Source: Hyphochytrium catenoides
Taxonomy: Eukaryota > Protista > Hyphochytriomycota
Length of the DNA: 64,000 bases
Reading direction: 5' to 3'
Assembly: GCA_900088475.1 (NCBI GenBank)
Contig: FLMG01000265.1
Coordinates: 124,001-188,000, forward strand
Each line of letters opens with the position of its first letter. Within the stretch, counting starts at the first letter, position 1. Below are positions 3,096-64,000 of the stretch, piece by piece. The translations under genes were made by a program, and so were the position numbers. A model generated the notes under the pieces. That model was given only the letters and a program-made list of their open reading frames with translations. It ran no database searches and was not told the origin of the DNA.

Positions 3096-5208
3096 ATGAG
3101 GTTCGTGTGCTGCCGTAGTAGCAGCAAGTACCGGAGGTATTACTCCTTTGAGGAAGCCGTTGTGAAAGGATGGTCAGACGACGGGGGTATGATCCTGCCA
3201 GCTTTGGATGAGGTAAGGAGCTTGCCTACTGCTTCCTAGTAGCCTTTCATGGAGAGCGAATACTAAGAATAATTGGTCAGATACCCTACTTCGACAGCCA
3301 TAAACTGCGCAATTGGGCGGACCTGCCTTATGAAGAACTCTGTTACCAAATACTGTCTCACTTCATCCCAGAAGATGAGATACCTGCTGACGTACTTCGA
3401 TCGCTGCTAGCTAGTGCCTTCGGGTGCTTTGGGAGTCCCGAGGTTAGCTCATTTATTGGCTGTTTTCAGAGAAATTATTCAACAAAAGATCCTCAGGTGG
3501 TCACCGTGAAAGACCTAGGACAAAACTTGCAGGTTGTGGAGCTGTGGCATGGCCCCACCGCTGCTTTTAAGGTATAGTAGTCAAAGGGCTGCTACAATCT
3601 AGATGAGCCCGATGGCTACTGACCTTTGATGTTAGGATCTTGGCATGCAGGTTCTTGCAGAGCTACTTAGCTACTTCATGAAGAAACGAGAGGAGAATCT
3701 CACTCTTCTTGTTGGAACGAGTGGTGATACCGGATCTTCTGCAATACATTCCGTCCTGGGCAAGGAAAATGTTTGTAGCCGTGTAAGCAAAGGCTTTGTT
3801 TATGATGCCTCTGACATCTGTTTGCTTGTAGATGAACCTCGTCGTTCTCTTTCCCAAAGGACGAATATCCGAGGTTCAGGAGCTGCAGATGACATCGGTC
3901 GGATCACAAGCTCCTAACGTCAAAGTTGTGGGTATGTCCTTGTTACAGATTCACCAAACAATGTAGTCTCTCACAAGTGCAAACCGCAAACTAGGAGTGG
4001 AAGGGACATCAGATGATTTGGATGTGCCTATCGAGGCCCTCTTTAGAGATCTGGAGTTCCGACGGCGGAATAATCTAGGCAGCGTCAATTCTGTCAATAT
4101 TTGTCGGCTGTTAGTACAGATAGTACACTACTTCTATGCCTACCTAAGGCACGATCCCACTGCCCAGAGCACCATAAACTTCAGCATTCCTACAGGCGCG
4201 GGAGGCCATGTTACAGCCGGAATATTGGGGCGTCTGATGGGGTTGCCTGTCAACCGTCTTATAGTTGCTACAAACGAGAACGATATATTCTCAAGGGTGA
4301 GCAGACGGCCTTATTACCAGACTTCCCTCGATTTGTCTCAGATCTCTTATCTCCCACTTAGTGGCTGAAAACTGGAACTTTTGCGAGGAAGAACTCTGTC
4401 CAAAGGACCACCTCCCCCTCTATGGACATTCAAGTTCCTTACAACATCGAAAGAGTCCTCTTTTTATTTGCAAATGGCACAGGTCACTTGGTAAGTCATA
4501 GGATTATGGTAGAATAGATGTCCCTCATGACTGCGCCAACTCTAGGTCTCAAAGTGGATGCGAGAGTTTAGAGAAACCGGAAAGCTTGAGTTCTCTTATG
4601 GCGAAATGGAAAGAATCCGCACCTTGTTCTCCCTCCGAGGACACTCAATCACAGACCAGAAAGTCTTAGCCGTAGGTGGAGCCATGATTTTACCTGGCTT
4701 ACAAAAGAAGCTAAGCGGCATTCGCTCACCTCGATAGACCATTTCAGAAGTGCACCGAGAGAAGAATTACCCTCTGGACCCACACACGGCAGTTGGTGTC
4801 GCCGCGGCCCTGGAGGAAGGAACTCAAAAGATGACGGTATGAAATCCTCCTACCTACACAGCTACGGTTCTCATCCTTGTCTCTTTGCCAGATTTGCATG
4901 GGCTGTGCTCACGCGGTGAAGTTTCTGGAGACACTCGGAAAGGCCCTGAACTCTTCTAGAGACGCTGCTGAGCTATTAACCTCAGCCGATAGGAGCCATC
5001 CCCATGTCACCAGGATATTAGGGTACGAAGCTAGCCGTTATTATTGCAAAAGGTGGGCACTGGAGCTAATGAAGCGCTCTTTAGCTTACGGGGCAAGAAC
5101 TTTCCATATGACGTCTTTCCAGCTGGCACCGATTGGAAACTGCAACTCAGGAGCATCGTCACCAACATGAGAGGAAGCATTCCCGCATCCACGAATCAGT
5201 TGGGTTAA
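3096..5208 (+). CDS. THNSL2: Threonine synthase / threonine synthase-like 2 (PLP-dependent), multi-exon
   Basis: N-terminus MRFVCCRS...SFEEAVVKGWSDDGGMILP; PLP-lysine motif ELWHGPTAAFK|DLGMQ; LLVGTSGDTGSSA; NSVNICRLLVQIVHYFYAY; PSMDIQVPYNIER; LDPHTAVG. Last exon ends DWKLQLRSIV...QLG* at 5208. Confidence 0.85.
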
Positions 5209-60293: not shown

Positions 60294-62575
60294 ATGTCGT
60301 TCATGACTCCGGCTGAGGATTATGTTGGGGAGGATGAAGAGCATATGCTTGTCTCCAAGCCGGCGGTGTCCTCAAGCCTAAAAACCACTTTATCAGGCTT
60401 CATGGCAGATGTAAGACCCATCAAACTGATTCTCAAGAAGCTAACCTAGGTACCCACTTCTAACCCTCCGCTACTTATCAGAATTTCCCAAAACAGAGCC
60501 TCCCGAAACTTCAGAAAATTATGAAGGGTAGAAGCAGAAGCGACCTATCGCTTCGTCGTCCTAGGCAGGAGGAATTGGCTGACCAGAACTGTGGGAGTGA
60601 TGCCGAACCGCTTATAAAGGTCCATTCAATGAAGAAATTTCTAGAGGGCAAAGTTGGCGCAATAAGTGGAACTTGGGTAGCCCAGGCGCCGGTCGCCGAT
60701 GGTGGTGGCGACATACATGTTGGTCGGCGATGGGTGCCAAGAGTGAGTCAGGAACGAAGTGAATCTCCTGATCGCTTGGGACAGTACCAATCTCAAGACA
60801 AAGTCATTGATGTCCAAGCAAGGGGGGCATGCCCTTATCTTCTAGAGAAACAGCCCGGCAACGTGAGCTTCTTGGTTGTCGGCTACACCGAAGGTCCATT
60901 AATAGGGATACCACAGTAAGGCCCCTTGCTCGTTTTACTCGTTAAGTTGTGGCTGACCTTAACTCTGTCAAGGGTCAAGGTGGGGGACTTGTTAGTCTGC
61001 ATCAATGGGGAGACATGTGACGGTCTCTCACAAAGCGAGGTAAGGCAGTCGTTTATCAGCACACTATTCAGCTCTAAGGTCAAAACTGCCTGCACTTACT
61101 TCGATAGATGGATGCCAAATTGAAGGCATTAGCCAACGATTCTAGGCAGGCATATTACTTAACCTTCAAAAGGCACTCCAACAGTGGCTCCCTTGGTGAG
61201 AGAGTTGGTGAGGCGCTTGACTTCATTCAGCTCAATAAGGAGCGTTTTTTTCGCCCAATCAGTCGATCTGAGGGGCTGACTTTGGTAGGTGTGGGCTAAC
61301 GCCGATCCTGGGATAGAGTAACATATGCCTAACTCTTTTGACTGTATCCTTTAATAGGGCTATGTAGAGCGCCTGAGGGGCGACAAAGTAACAGCCTTTC
61401 ATCTGCATAGACAAGATACTGGAGAGGTACGGCTGTTGATCTTTACTGGAGTGTCGCAGATCGATGACCTTATGCTCCTGTACGGAAGTTTATCTTGGCG
61501 TGCAGTTGTAAAGCCGACATGACGGGACCTTTCATTTTCCACACATCGCAGAATAGTCATCTCCGCACCATGAAGGAATTGCTGCAACTTCCTGGCAGGT
61601 GTGACACATTAACAATCTTGGCTCGCTAGCACTTTGCAACTCACATCACTATGAAAGTGCCACGTACCTAGGCTCCATGTCTGAAAACTTTTTGGGTACG
61701 GAATTTGCCATTCAGGATCACAGGTCGGGCTATAACCCAAAGACAGAGGAGGTAAGATGAGCGAGAGCAACGTAAATGACTGTGTGGCACTAAAGGAGAC
61801 CGAACATAGCGCACGGATATCGCTGTCATTATTTATCAGAGAAATGTGTTGGGCCGCTGCCCAAATGCACTCAAGGTATGATCCGGGACTAACATAGCCA
61901 GGCTCTGGGTTGGAGCTCACCCTCTTACTGCTCTCCGGTAGCTTATACTCCCGCGAGAGAGTGATCAGGCGAAGCGCAGGGTCTATGTGCCAGCGAGGCT
62001 TAGAGACGAGCGTCGTAGAAGGACGACTAGTCATGTTCTTAGGAAGTTCAGGTCATTGACCCTGAATGATATGCGGACATTCGCCAAAGCCGTTACGAGC
62101 AGCAGCAGGTGAGCTTTACCATTCAGCTAGACGGGATGTAGAGCGGCCTAAAATCATCTTTATGAGCAGAGACTTCGCCGTTACCACCGGAAGCGAGGCT
62201 TCATCTTCCACCTTCGACGATGTTTTAAAGAGTACAGCAGCGGATTGCATCAAGCACTATGACGCAGTCGTTCAGAACGAATCTGAAGAGCTATTTATAT
62301 TTCAGACACGAAAGCCAACCTGGAATAGTGATCTTCGAGCTTGGACCTTGAACTTCGGCGGTCGTGTAAAGCAAGCGTCCAAGAAGAATTTTTTGATTAG
62401 CGGTGAAGAAGGAAACAGCAGGATGGAGGAAGAATTTGGGACCGACGACATCGTCTTCCGCTTTGGCAAGGTGAATAAGAATAAGTTTTCCTGTGACTTC
62501 AGCTATCCGTTCTCTCCTGTCGTCGCGTTAGGTACGGCAGTAACGTCTTTTGCCGACAAGCTAATAGTAACATAA
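60294..62575 (+). CDS. PDZ-like domain plus Tubby C-terminal domain protein
   Basis: PDZ-like VKVGDLLVCINGETCDGLS (~60975-61040). Tubby motifs FHLHRQDTGEFILA, YLGSMSENFLGTEF, KPTWNSDLRAWTLNFGGRVKQASKKNF and FRFGKV....FSCDFSYPFSPVVAL..A..SF..KL. Confidence 0.82.
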
Positions 62576-62602
62576 TCCTTAATACAATCTTTCAATCTTT
62601 CA

Positions 62603-63819
62603 TCAGTCTTTTTTAGCAACGTCAATCCCTAAGCTGTACCTTTCCACTATGTCAAGAAAGGCTAAAAGCTCCCCTGATCTTATGCATGATGCGGTGCCTT
62701 CAATATACTGAACTGCTTCATGCTTGTCGGGCTGGGGGTTTACAACCCCTTCTACAACTCCGATAGCACCACTGTCCCTGATGATTGGACCTCCGCACAT
62801 CCCCCAGCCCATAGGTTTATCTGTTCTAATAAATAGCTGGTGGTCCGTAAAAGCTGCTATCTGCCCCGACATTTCTTTAGGAATCTGGGCCAAAGGACGA
62901 GAAGGATCTAGATCAGAAAGGGTCTGGGGAGGGGGAAAAACGAGACAGCTGGGCTACCTGAACTCTTGTGTCCTGTTGACTCTCTGGGACACTACCGCTT
63001 TCTGAGATCTCATGTCCTACACATTGAACGATCTAGGACGATATGACATTAAGCAGCGCCCCATTGAGTATGACTTGAGGGGTGCCCTCACCTCCTCGTG
63101 CTTCACTGGCAACAGGTCTAGGGTAAGAGGCTGAAGAGGACTTCCAGAGGCAGACAGCTGCCTGTTTAGCTCCACCTAATACCAGTCACGGTAAGGTTGA
63201 GAATGTTAAGGTCTCTTCTGCACTACACGGCGTTTCCTACCTCGTCCTCGAAATGAACCACCGCAAGGTCACGAGAAGGATGAGTAAAGACCTTCCTTGT
63301 TAGCGGCACCTCAAGGAGAATTTGACCAGTCTCTACCTACAGGGGCGGAGCGCTTCAGTAAATAGATCCAATAAGATACGAGAACCGCAAATCTCGTGGA
63401 GCTAGCACCTCACGGAACTCCACAGTCATCCGAGTGTGGGACTCATTGACATGCTGGAGCCAAGACCAGACATCTTTGAAATATCGCTCATAGAGCCATG
63501 GAGATGTCACATGCGCTGACGTGATCAGGTGCAATCGCTTCGGAAACACCTCGCGATTGCGGCTTACACAAAACGCTGATGCCCTACACGTCATACCAGT
63601 TGGCAAGATAGTACCTTGGAGAAGAAAACACACCAGCCTAGATACAGCTCTTTAGATAAGTACCTGGATAGAATCTCAAAGTCCTGCATGCCAAAAGCCG
63701 GCTGTTTGAACCTTGATAACGGTGCATCAGAAGCCAGGACATTTAGTCAGGGCCATGAGTCCTTACCATGTAGATATTGAAACGACATGCCTCAGAAGGC
63801 CTTTCCTACTAATCTCCAT
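62603..63819 (-). CDS. Trypsin/chymotrypsin-fold (PA clan) peptidase with Cys at the nucleophile position, 7 exons, ~270 aa
   Basis: Spliced product MEISRKG..FEILSRASAFCV..LITSAHV (His 63511-63513)..FTHPSRDLAVVHF (Asp 63268-63270)..GWGMCGGPII (Cys 62795-62797)..AIGVVEG. All six introns are GT-AG and preserve frame. Confidence 0.8.
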
Positions 63820-64000
63820 GGCACCAGGAGTAGACTTGAAGCCTGTTGCACCCTCAACAGATCACGGAAACTCGACCCTGGGCTACACAGACGTGAACGA
63901 TTCCTCTGAAACCTATCAATAAAGTAAGGCCAGACAACAAGCAAGCTCCGGACAGCTCTCCGGACTATTCGCCTTCGTTTCGAAGCTTTCAGAGCTTACT

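What the first reader, a model, noticed from the sequence alone, without database searches (positions are those of the whole stretch)
62603..63819. Cellular trypsin-fold protease with a His-Asp-Cys triad (3C-like nucleophile)
Seen: a 7-exon gene whose spliced product has the three trypsin-like catalytic motifs in order: LITSAHV, HPSRDLAVV and GMCGGP (codon TGC at 62795-62797), where cellular family members have G-x-S-G-G-P. Established: chymotrypsin-fold cysteine proteases are typical of RNA viruses (picornaviral 3C, G-x-C-G-G), while cellular PA-clan enzymes are almost all Ser proteases. Inference: intact His and Asp plus a clean intron structure suggest an active host-encoded 3C-like cysteine protease, a poorly described enzyme class. 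There is no obvious signal peptide, so it is probably intracellular.
Basis: partly seen in the sequence, partly recalled or inferred. Interest (0 to 1): 0.78.

Follow-up and report, generated by a model that had tools for sequence, protein, structure and literature searches.

The report
Cellular trypsin-fold protein with cysteine nucleophile
This is a real, spliced protist gene for an HtrA/Deg-like trypsin-fold protein in which cysteine replaces the usual active-site serine; the swap is fixed across a family found in stramenopiles and trypanosomes, whose Trypanosoma brucei member is listed as respiratory complex I subunit NDUTB9.

Summary
A seven-exon gene on the minus strand at 62603-63819 encodes about 270 residues, with His58 (LITSAHV), Asp115 (HPSRDLAVV) and Cys207 (GMCGGP). 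The Cys codon is TGC at 62797-62795.

- **Not a sequencing error.** TGC is unchanged in contigs of three DNA runs of the same organism. Those contigs differ from the window elsewhere.
- **The Cys is a family trait.** More than 150 relatives carry [GST][ML]CGGP together with the His and Asp. Only Strigomonas culicis has Ser.
- **The fold is HtrA/Deg-like, not 3C-like.** Models of two relatives match Deg2, DegS and HTRA1 best (Z 20-21). A 3C protease appears only at rank 48 of one search.
- **Homology fixed two splice sites.** Intron 2 is 80 nt and intron 6 is most likely 73 nt.
- **There is a link to complex I.** A profile comparison joins the stramenopile-type family to a kinetoplastid clade (E 6e-30). 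Its T. brucei member, XP_829447.1, is catalogued as complex I subunit NDUTB9.

I read it as an intracellular, probably mitochondrial, thiol endopeptidase. Activity, location and the complex I link in this organism are all inferred. No RNA data exist. The scan noted this same stretch twice (s1-345847, s1-371213), but not on other DNA.

The parts
62603..63819 (-). Whole coding span of the gene (ATG to stop): 7 exons, 270 codons
   Evidence: Open spliced frame. Exons match the family profile in colinear order. Single copy in the genome.
63767..63819 (-). Exon 1: start codon and a short basic N-terminus ending in the family's VSISTW(F) strand
   Evidence: The ...RHVVSISTW|F motif fits the family N-terminus [KR]..[LV]S[IL]S[ST]WF. 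Donor GTAAGG.
63664..63711 (-). Exon 2: FKQPAFGMQDFEILS
   Evidence: Matches family profile positions 18-32.
63409..63583 (-). Exon 3: first barrel strands and the catalytic His58 (codon 63513-63511) in LITSAHV
   Evidence: Profile positions 34-90, E 2e-22. The acceptor at 63584 restores the family's EILSR|ASAF junction. Also matches the kinetoplastid NDUTB9 profile, 15.9 bits.
63241..63336 (-). Exon 4: His111 and catalytic Asp115 (codon 63270-63268) in HPSRDLAVV
   Evidence: Profile positions 91-121, E 2e-10. The Asp column is invariant in A1, A2, A3 and A4.
63092..63175 (-). Exon 5: variable linker between the two barrels
   Evidence: Supported by frame continuity. Only a weak match to the Blastocystis relative (PL.L...PV motif, E 0.04). 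One allelic Asn/Thr difference.
62958..63032 (-). Exon 6: IVQCVGHEIS..., start of the second barrel
   Evidence: Profile positions 149-172. The GH motif is nearly invariant in A2.
62603..62884 (-). Exon 7 (preferred acceptor) with GMCGGP, Cys207 codon TGC 62797-62795, and stop 62605-62603
   Evidence: Starts exactly at profile position 174, following exon 6, E 1e-21. TGC is unchanged in three DNA runs. Language-model features match trypsin-like peptidases.
62885..62923 (-). Stretch that is intron in the preferred model (73-nt intron 6). It would be coding (13 extra residues) if the acceptor at 62924 were used (34-nt intron).
   Evidence: Both joins keep the frame open. The extra residues have no counterpart in the family profile, and the stretch carries an allelic change at 62901. 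RNA is needed to settle this.

Best explanation
The gene encodes a single-domain, roughly 30-kDa intracellular endopeptidase with the HtrA/Deg-type trypsin (PA-clan) double beta-barrel and no PDZ domain. The nucleophile is Cys207 in place of Ser. By analogy with every PA-clan enzyme, His58 would deprotonate the Cys, Asp115 would orient the His, and the backbone NH groups of the G-M-C-G-G turn would form the oxyanion hole, so catalysis would run through a thioester acyl-enzyme.

The gene belongs to an old eukaryotic family (stramenopiles, kinetoplastids and many unnamed environmental eukaryotes) in which this Cys is fixed. The T. brucei member is catalogued as complex I subunit NDUTB9. The most likely place of action is therefore the mitochondrion, on or beside NADH:ubiquinone oxidoreductase, for example in processing, assembly or quality control.

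Shown here: the gene, the motifs, the Cys codon, family-wide conservation, the fold of two relatives, and homology to NDUTB9. Inferred: catalytic activity, mitochondrial location and the complex I link in this organism (I put the last at about 0.4). The substrate is unknown.
For: - **Gene and triad.**
- **TGC is genuine.** It is kept in three DNA runs that differ from the window elsewhere. There are 9 differences in 813 coding nt (4 synonymous; the non-synonymous ones lie only in the C-terminal tail and variable loops) against 11 plus one indel in 404 intron nt.
- **Exhaustive search.** HMMER search of 1.84 billion representatives with exon 7 gave 45 hits; 43 carry G[MLS]CG and none carries Ser.
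- **Profile searches.** The first gave 88 proteins; all 73 with a G-x-[SCTA]-G motif at the aligned nucleophile position have Cys there. The second gave 51 proteins, including kinetoplastids with [ST]MCGGP.
- **Invariant columns.** His, Asp and Cys are invariant in A1, A2, A3 and A4.
- **Selection for Cys.** Both TGC and TGT occur at the site among homologous genes, with synonymous drift in the neighbouring Gly and Pro codons.
- **Ser/Cys exchange.** Strigomonas culicis has Ser at that position in all three of its gene models. Nucleophiles exchange in this way.
- **Fold.** AF2 model of Mallomonas P0041: pLDDT 90.5, pTM 0.89. The Foldseek top 50 are all HTRA1, DegS, Deg1, Deg2 or DegP, E about 5e-11. 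VIA gives Deg2 Z 20.4 and DegS Z 20.0. The T. brucei model has pLDDT 80.8 and Deg2 Z 21.0.
- **Position of the Cys.** In the PDB profile search the Cys aligns with residue 328 of HTRA1 S328A, the catalytic serine position. Pfam Trypsin_2 matches 41 of 56 members.
- **Eukaryotic hosts.** Homologues lie among eukaryotic genes such as kinesin, SNF2 and FUN14.
- **Link to NDUTB9.** hhalign of A2 against A4 gives probability 99.8 and E 6e-30 over 207 columns, including the family-specific N-terminal strand. The window's exons match the kinetoplastid profile colinearly. P0229 is XP_829447.1, listed as NDUTB9 in PMC12699882 Table 1. One T. cruzi copy is annotated as a complex I alpha-subcomplex subunit and the Leptomonas copy as 'putative mitochondrial'.
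Against: - No enzymatic, expression or localisation data exist for this gene or for any stramenopile member, and no RNA run was found.
- Triad geometry could not be measured, because the tools return no coordinates. The window's own spliced protein was not folded.
- Engineered Ser-to-Cys swaps usually cripple hydrolases (PMC6642262 abstract), so Cys at the site does not guarantee activity.
- Most members, including this one, have only a short basic N-terminus and no long presequence, so mitochondrial import is not evident from the sequence.
- The NDUTB9 assignment rests on affinity-purification proteomics that I could not read. No solved structure contains the protein. Diplonema and Euglena are reported to lack it.
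Confidence: 0.6

Rival explanations
1. Pseudo-protease. The protein is a structural accessory subunit or assembly factor of complex I that keeps the trypsin fold but no longer cleaves peptide bonds. The conserved His, Asp and Cys would serve binding, redox sensing or stability.
For: Complex I is known (general knowledge) to have recruited enzyme-fold subunits with little or no catalysis, such as the SDR-like NDUFA9 and gamma-carbonic anhydrases. The T. brucei member is listed as a subunit, not as a protease. Inactive trypsin-fold proteins such as haptoglobin and the scabies mite SMIPPs are among the structural neighbours.
Against: Known pseudo-proteases lose triad residues. Here all three, plus the Gly-rich oxyanion turn, are invariant over more than 150 sequences at 25-45% identity. 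The one substitution seen at the site is Ser, the other competent nucleophile.
Confidence: 0.2
2. An active cysteine protease working elsewhere in the cell (cytosol or nucleus). The complex I link in trypanosomes would then be a co-purification artefact or a lineage-specific recruitment.
For: The N-terminus is short with no clear presequence or signal peptide. Other PDZ-less intracellular Trypsin_2-type proteases exist, for example FAM111A (structural neighbour; PMC9798293). Diplonemids and Euglena are reported to lack NDUTB9.
Against: There are independent mitochondrial or complex I annotations in T. brucei, T. cruzi and Leptomonas. The family is retained in Blastocystis and Phytomonas, which by general knowledge keep complex I while having lost other respiratory complexes.
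Confidence: 0.18
3. A domesticated viral 3C or 3C-like protease gene, that is, an endogenous viral element.
For: The G-x-C-G-G motif is shared with picornaviral 3C. According to PMC6524800, all nine PA-clan cysteine families in MEROPS come from positive-strand RNA viruses. A virus-type methyltransferase was noted 10 kb away by another reader (I did not test it).
Against: Peptidase_C3 matches 0 of 56 members, against 41 of 56 for Trypsin_2. The PDB profile hits are HtrA/DegP only. No 3C is in the top 50 structural matches for P0041, and FMDV 3C ranks 48 for the T. brucei model. The best matches in the viral structure library are giant-virus Do-like and sobemo/barna-type serine proteases. The gene has six introns, and homologues lie in unrelated eukaryotic neighbourhoods.
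Confidence: 0.02
4. A sequencing or assembly error, or a decaying pseudogene.
For: None beyond the lack of RNA evidence.
Against: TGC is present in three runs from two samples. The frame is open, substitutions are depleted in exons relative to introns, and the exons match the family profile strongly.
Confidence: 0.01

Closest known systems
HtrA/Deg/DegS serine proteases (MEROPS S1C; Pfam Trypsin_2 PF13365)
   Same: - Best structural matches: Deg2 Z 20.4-21.0, DegS Z 20.0, HTRA1 Foldseek E 5e-11.
- Best PDB profile matches.
- Similar motifs: ..T.AHV, D[LIV]A.L and G..GGP.
- Same His, Asp, nucleophile order.
   Different: - The nucleophile is Cys, not Ser.
- There is no PDZ domain.
- A family-specific N-terminal strand (S[ST][WY]F) and an insert after the His (PW..P.YY..WL) are present.
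- Sequence similarity is marginal (E about 2e-3 against the PDB profile).
- Oligomeric state is unknown.
[quoted passage not shown]
   Same: Trypsin-type fold with a His-Asp/Glu-Cys triad and a G-x-C-G-G turn, so the same chemistry is expected.
   Different: - This is a cellular, intron-bearing nuclear gene and not part of a polyprotein.
- No Pfam C3 match.
- 3C structures rank far below HtrA/Deg.
- The Cys is most simply read as an independent Ser-to-Cys switch within an HtrA-like lineage.
NDUTB9, a trypanosomatid complex I subunit (T. brucei XP_829447.1 / Q382E6)
   Same: Homologous over the full length, including the N-terminal strand, His, Asp and Cys (hhalign E 6e-30). Similar size (265-303 aa against 270). 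Same HtrA/Deg-like predicted fold.
   Different: - About 25% identity.
- The kinetoplastid motif is [ST]MCGGP, and the His four residues before the Asp is absent.
- NDUTB9 is described as euglenozoan-specific, whereas this gene is from a soil protist with stramenopile-type relatives.
- Association with complex I is untested outside trypanosomes.
FAM111A/B and other intracellular PDZ-less Trypsin_2-type proteases
   Same: Intracellular trypsin-fold enzymes without a signal peptide. FAM111A appears among the structural neighbours.
   Different: FAM111 proteins use Ser, are larger multi-domain proteins, and show no specific sequence relationship to this family.

Membership tests
PA clan (chymotrypsin/trypsin double beta-barrel fold) | Two six-stranded beta-barrels with the active site between them | tested here: met
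   Tested on relatives, not on the window's own spliced protein. P0041 model: pLDDT 90.5, Z 20.4 to Deg2, 127 PDB representatives at Z of 8 or more. T. brucei P0229 model: Z 21.0. The window's exons align colinearly with both family profiles.
PA clan | Catalytic residues in the order His, Asp, nucleophile, with a G-x-Nuc-G-G oxyanion turn | tested here: met
   His58, Asp115 and Cys207 in GMCGGP. These columns are invariant in A1-A4.
PA clan | Triad side chains within hydrogen-bonding geometry | not testable with these tools
   The structure tools return no coordinates. This is only implied by full-domain superpositions on HtrA/Deg at rmsd 2.4-3.3 A.
Serine peptidase family S1, subfamily S1C (HtrA/DegP) | Serine nucleophile | tested here: not met
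   Cys (TGC) in the window and in nearly all relatives.
Serine peptidase family S1, subfamily S1C (HtrA/DegP) | One or more C-terminal PDZ domains | tested here: not met
   The protein ends about 60 residues after the Cys. Across the 56 members of A2, Pfam finds only Trypsin_2 recurrently and no PDZ.
Pfam Trypsin_2 (PF13365) | Score above the gathering threshold (27.6 bits) | tested here: inconclusive
   Single exons of the window give no Trypsin_2 hit, and the joined model was not scanned. Among relatives, 41 of 56 match at E of 0.1 or better, and a few pass the threshold (P0041 32.2, P0016 29.7, P0023 29.6 bits).
Viral 3C / 3C-like cysteine proteases (MEROPS C3 and allies) | Cys nucleophile in a trypsin fold | tested here: met
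Viral 3C / 3C-like cysteine proteases (MEROPS C3 and allies) | Encoded in a viral polyprotein, with sequence or structure nearest to 3C | tested here: not met
   Spliced nuclear gene. Peptidase_C3 matches 0 of 56. 3C is absent from the top 50 or ranks 48.
NDUTB9 family (trypanosomatid complex I subunit) | Full-length homology to T. brucei XP_829447.1 | tested here: met
   hhalign of A2 against A4: probability 99.8, E 6e-30. Window exons 3 and 7 score 15.9 and 14.5 bits against the kinetoplastid profile, in colinear order.
NDUTB9 family (trypanosomatid complex I subunit) | Physical association with mitochondrial complex I | not testable with these tools
   Known only from the literature listing for T. 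brucei. The primary proteomics papers are not held, and no solved structure contains it.

The most novel reading that the evidence does not exclude
This would be the first cellular (non-viral) cysteine-nucleophile family of the PA clan. It would be an ancient eukaryotic thiol protease that arose from an HtrA/Deg-like serine protease independently of viral 3C, and that works on or in respiratory complex I in both stramenopiles and kinetoplastids. In that case the 'trypanosome-specific' subunit NDUTB9 is neither lineage-specific nor merely structural.
Probability: 0.3. Interest if true: 0.82.

Novelty: new variant of a known kind. Interest (0 to 1): 0.7.

Why it matters
Reviews of the PA clan state that its cysteine members all come from positive-strand RNA viruses (PMC6524800). 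Engineered Ser-to-Cys swaps usually wreck hydrolases (PMC6642262). A cellular lineage that has kept a His-Asp-Cys triad across two distant eukaryotic supergroups would therefore be informative in three ways.

- It would be a natural experiment on how a trypsin fold is retuned for thiol chemistry.
- It would show that the viral 3C solution was reached independently in cells.
- It would attach a testable enzymatic activity to an unexplained complex I subunit of trypanosomatids, which include human and animal parasites where genetic tools and tagging resources already exist.

It also corrects the view that NDUTB9 is confined to Euglenozoa.

Tried and rejected
- **Family scans of single exons.** Pfam and NCBIfam gave only a sub-threshold SpoIVB/S55 hit at the Cys motif.
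- **Word-index protein search with exon 7.** It found nothing, because its length window excludes full-length relatives.
- **Second genomic hit, C3853.** It is a PdxT-like glutaminase exon and a chance match.
- **Top hit of the big search, P0001, and P0017.** These are artefacts of repeated PAS-like and coiled-coil units. They have no catalytic motif.
- **Short-intron variants.** The 26-nt intron 2 and 34-nt intron 6 were rejected on homology.
- **The search for related loci in bacterial/archaeal and viral collections.** It failed because the alignment is too diverse to give a search pattern. Absence from prokaryotes and viruses was therefore not tested directly.
- **Reads.** All runs that hold the stretch are DNA contigs without joints, so there is no transcript evidence. 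A short contig carrying a homologue showed no poly(A) tail.
- **Literature.** Searches for the motif, for cellular PA-clan cysteine proteases and for HtrA with Cys found nothing relevant.
- **NDUTB9 sources.** Acestor 2011 and Valach 2018 are not held. The supplements of PMC7307792 do not mention NDUTB9. No PDB chain matches T. brucei NDUTB9.
- **Joined spliced protein.** It was assembled only inside local scripts, for translation and for classifying variants. The two folds are of relatives.
- **Long N-terminal extensions in some metagenomic homologues.** They looked like presequences, but most have an internal Met at the family's usual start, so they are probably ORF-calling artefacts.

Full report
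**Observation.** On the minus strand of 62603-63819 the sequence reads an ATG at 63819, six GT..AG introns and a stop at 62605-62603.
- LITSAHV, with the His codon at 63513-63511
- HPSRDLAVV, with the Asp codon at 63270-63268
- GMCGGP, with the Cys codon TGC at 62797-62795

Pfam and NCBIfam scans of single exons gave nothing significant. Protein language-model features of exon 7 pointed to trypsin-like peptidases.

**Gene model.** I did not send a joined protein to any search or fold tool. Each exon was scored on its own against a profile built locally from 70 relatives. The exons fall in colinear order:

| Exon | Profile positions | E-value |
|---|---|---|
| 2 | 18-32 | 1.6e-05 |
| 3 | 34-90 | 2e-22 |
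| 4 | 91-121 | 2e-10 |
| 6 | 149-172 | 9e-04 |
| 7 (starting at 62884) | 174-260 | 1e-21 |

The two split codons fill positions 17 and 33.

This corrected two junctions that the raw sequence leaves open. Intron 2 is 63663-63584 (80 nt), which restores the family's EILSR|ASAF junction. A 26-nt intron would add 18 unmatched residues. Intron 6 is most likely 62957-62885 (73 nt). The in-frame alternative ending at 62924 (34 nt) adds 13 residues with no counterpart in the family.

The preferred model has exons 63819-63767, 63711-63664, 63583-63409, 63336-63241, 63175-63092, 63032-62958 and 62884-62603. The introns are 55, 80, 72, 65, 59 and 73 nt, and the product has 270 residues. Exon 5 covers a variable linker. 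It is supported only by frame continuity and a weak match to the Blastocystis relative.

**Is the Cys codon real?** The only runs holding this stretch are DNA. Contigs of three runs of the same organism, from two samples, cover the codon without change. They differ from the window at 23 single-base places and a few indels.

Classified on the model, the differences are as follows:
- 9 lie in 813 coding nt. Four are synonymous. The non-synonymous ones fall only in the C-terminal tail and two variable loops.
- 11, plus one indel, lie in 404 intron nt.

This is the pattern of an expressed gene under purifying selection, and it rules out a sequencing error. There is no RNA evidence.

**Relatives.** The word-index search with exon 7 found nothing, because of its length window. 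The exhaustive HMMER search over 1.84 billion representatives returned 45 hits, the best at 53 bits. Of these, 43 carry G[MLS]CG at the aligned site. The other two, P0001 and P0017, are repeat artefacts.

Named members include two Blastocystis hypothetical proteins, Mallomonas annulata and an uncultured chrysophyte. The rest come from metagenomes and run assemblies. A profile search added 88 proteins, and all 73 with a G-x-[SCTA]-G motif at the aligned nucleophile position have Cys there.

Homologues lie on contigs with plainly eukaryotic neighbours such as kinesin, SNF2, FUN14 and protein kinases. At the DNA level the site is TGC or TGT in different species, with synonymous drift in the flanking Gly and Pro codons. 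The gene is single-copy in its own 61-Mb genome.

**Fold.** An AlphaFold2 model of the Mallomonas relative, built with a 56-sequence alignment, is confident (pLDDT 90.5, pTM 0.89).
- The Foldseek top 50 PDB matches are all HTRA1, DegS, Deg1, Deg2 or DegP, with E about 5e-11.
- The Foldseek-independent search gives Deg2 Z 20.4, DegS Z 20.0 and V8 protease Z 18.9. No 3C protease is in the top 50.
- In the viral structure library the best matches are giant-virus Do-like and sobemo/barna-type serine proteases.
- A sequence profile against the PDB finds only HtrA/DegP (best E 2e-3). It aligns the Cys with residue 328 of the HTRA1 S328A mutants, which is the catalytic serine position.
- Pfam Trypsin_2 matches 41 of 56 members. 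Peptidase_C3 matches none.

The family is therefore an offshoot of cellular HtrA/Deg-like proteases that lacks PDZ domains. The resemblance to 3C is limited to the nucleophile.

**The trypanosome link.** A second profile search, seeded with the more divergent members, reached a kinetoplastid clade. It includes Trypanosoma brucei, T. cruzi, T. vivax and T. congolense, Leishmania species, Leptomonas, Phytomonas and Bodo saltans. These proteins have 265-303 residues and carry [ST]MCGGP. The His, Asp and Cys are invariant in a 20-sequence alignment.

Only Strigomonas culicis differs. It has Ser at that position in all three of its gene models. That is the exchange expected of a nucleophile.

Profile-profile comparison of the stramenopile-type alignment with the kinetoplastid alignment gives probability 99.8 and E 6e-30 over 207 columns. 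The aligned region includes the family-specific N-terminal strand. The window's exons 3 and 7 also match the kinetoplastid profile in colinear order.

The T. brucei protein is XP_829447.1 / Q382E6. PMC12699882 lists it in Table 1 as complex I subunit NDUTB9, among 'euglenozoan-specific' subunits, with no homologue retrieved in diplonemids or Euglena. One T. cruzi copy is annotated as a complex I alpha-subcomplex subunit, and the Leptomonas copy as 'putative mitochondrial'.

A model of the T. brucei protein (pLDDT 80.8) is again Deg/HtrA-like: Deg2 Z 21.0, with FMDV 3C at rank 48. No solved structure contains this protein. I could not read the primary proteomics papers.

**Mechanism.** I read the protein as a thiol endopeptidase using His58, Asp115 and Cys207 in the standard PA-clan arrangement. 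This rests on four observations:
- the triad and the Gly-rich oxyanion turn are invariant over more than 150 sequences at 25-45% identity;
- both Cys codons are in use at the site;
- a single Ser reversal is seen;
- the fold is canonical.

Family members, this one included, start with a short basic N-terminus that leads straight into a conserved beta-strand. There is no signal peptide, so the protein is intracellular. The trypanosome data make the mitochondrion and complex I the best guess for where it acts. That step is inference, at about 0.4. Substrate and specificity are unknown.

**Rivals.**
- *A non-catalytic complex I subunit with a fossil triad.* This is the serious alternative. It fits how complex I recruits enzyme folds, but it does not fit the complete conservation of the catalytic residues.
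- *A protease acting outside the mitochondrion.* This remains possible.
- *A captured viral 3C gene.* This is disfavoured by the sequence, the structure, the introns and the genomic contexts of homologues.
- *A sequencing error or pseudogene.* This is excluded.

**Novelty.** In the accessible literature the PA-clan cysteine families are all described as viral (PMC6524800). My searches found no paper on a cellular family of this kind or on the GMCGGP motif. NDUTB9 appears in one held paper, as a name only. Database names such as 'trypsin-like peptidase domain containing protein' show that the fold has been detected automatically.

The new points are the fixed Cys nucleophile in a cellular lineage, the range of the family beyond Euglenozoa, and the link between the two. 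I class it as a new variant of a known kind.

**Limits.**
- There are no transcript data.
- No fold or search was run on the window's own joined protein.
- The tools return no coordinates, so triad geometry was not measured.
- Prokaryotic and viral collections were not scanned, because the alignment was too diverse for that tool.
- The source organism is coded. Identical short contigs in a rhizosphere metagenome suggest a soil protist. Other readers' untested notes point to kinship with oomycetes.

Noticed in passing
window 62066-62575 (+): The last exon of a convergent neighbour encodes a Tubby C-terminal domain (Pfam Tub, E 1.3e-26). Its stop lies only 28 nt from the protease gene's stop, so the two 3' ends must overlap or abut.
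   Followed up: partly
L012 (G000:C3555) 5025-5153 (-): An intron-less 34-residue look-alike of the family's N-terminal motif (SLSSFF...GMGDF..LSRASASLV; 19.8 bits locally, genome-wide E 0.13). No remainder of the gene lies on the 6.6-kb contig. It may be a relic or retro-copied fragment, or it may be chance.
   Followed up: partly
P0015, P0022, P0032, P0037, P0040, P0043 (one search hits; L005 8001-9545): A sister subfamily in environmental eukaryotes carries P[ED]GLCG[GA]P plus a long charged C-terminal extension (the MLEQ..P... region). P0015 also has a large insert before the His. This genome has no copy of it.
   Followed up: no
P0215, P0245, P0246 (Strigomonas culicis): These are the only family members seen with Ser at the nucleophile position (PLSLSGGPV). 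They also lack the second, kinetoplastid-conserved Cys (GKVVG in place of GKCVG).
   Followed up: partly
window 63135-63263 and elsewhere in 62400-64000: Runs X2 and X3 each contain two contig versions of 63135-63263, one identical to the window and one with 5 differences plus an indel. Together with about 1.5% divergence elsewhere, this suggests two haplotypes, that is, a heterozygous diploid or mixed strains.
   Followed up: no
window 63442-63592 and 63825-63974: A 2025 rhizosphere metagenome (X4) holds two 151-base contigs that match these stretches: one is identical and the other has one base change and one indel. Several soil and rhizosphere metagenomes hold small shares of the stretch's words. 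The organism, or a very close relative, lives in soil.
   Followed up: no
P0001 (top hit): A bacterial protein of 1827 residues with PAS and GGDEF domains topped the exhaustive search only because a beta-hairpin-like segment (F[IV]R[ST]D..GW...G..[IV]RD..G.[IV]..V.G) recurs about eight times. It has no catalytic motif. This is a caution for short-exon queries.
   Followed up: yes
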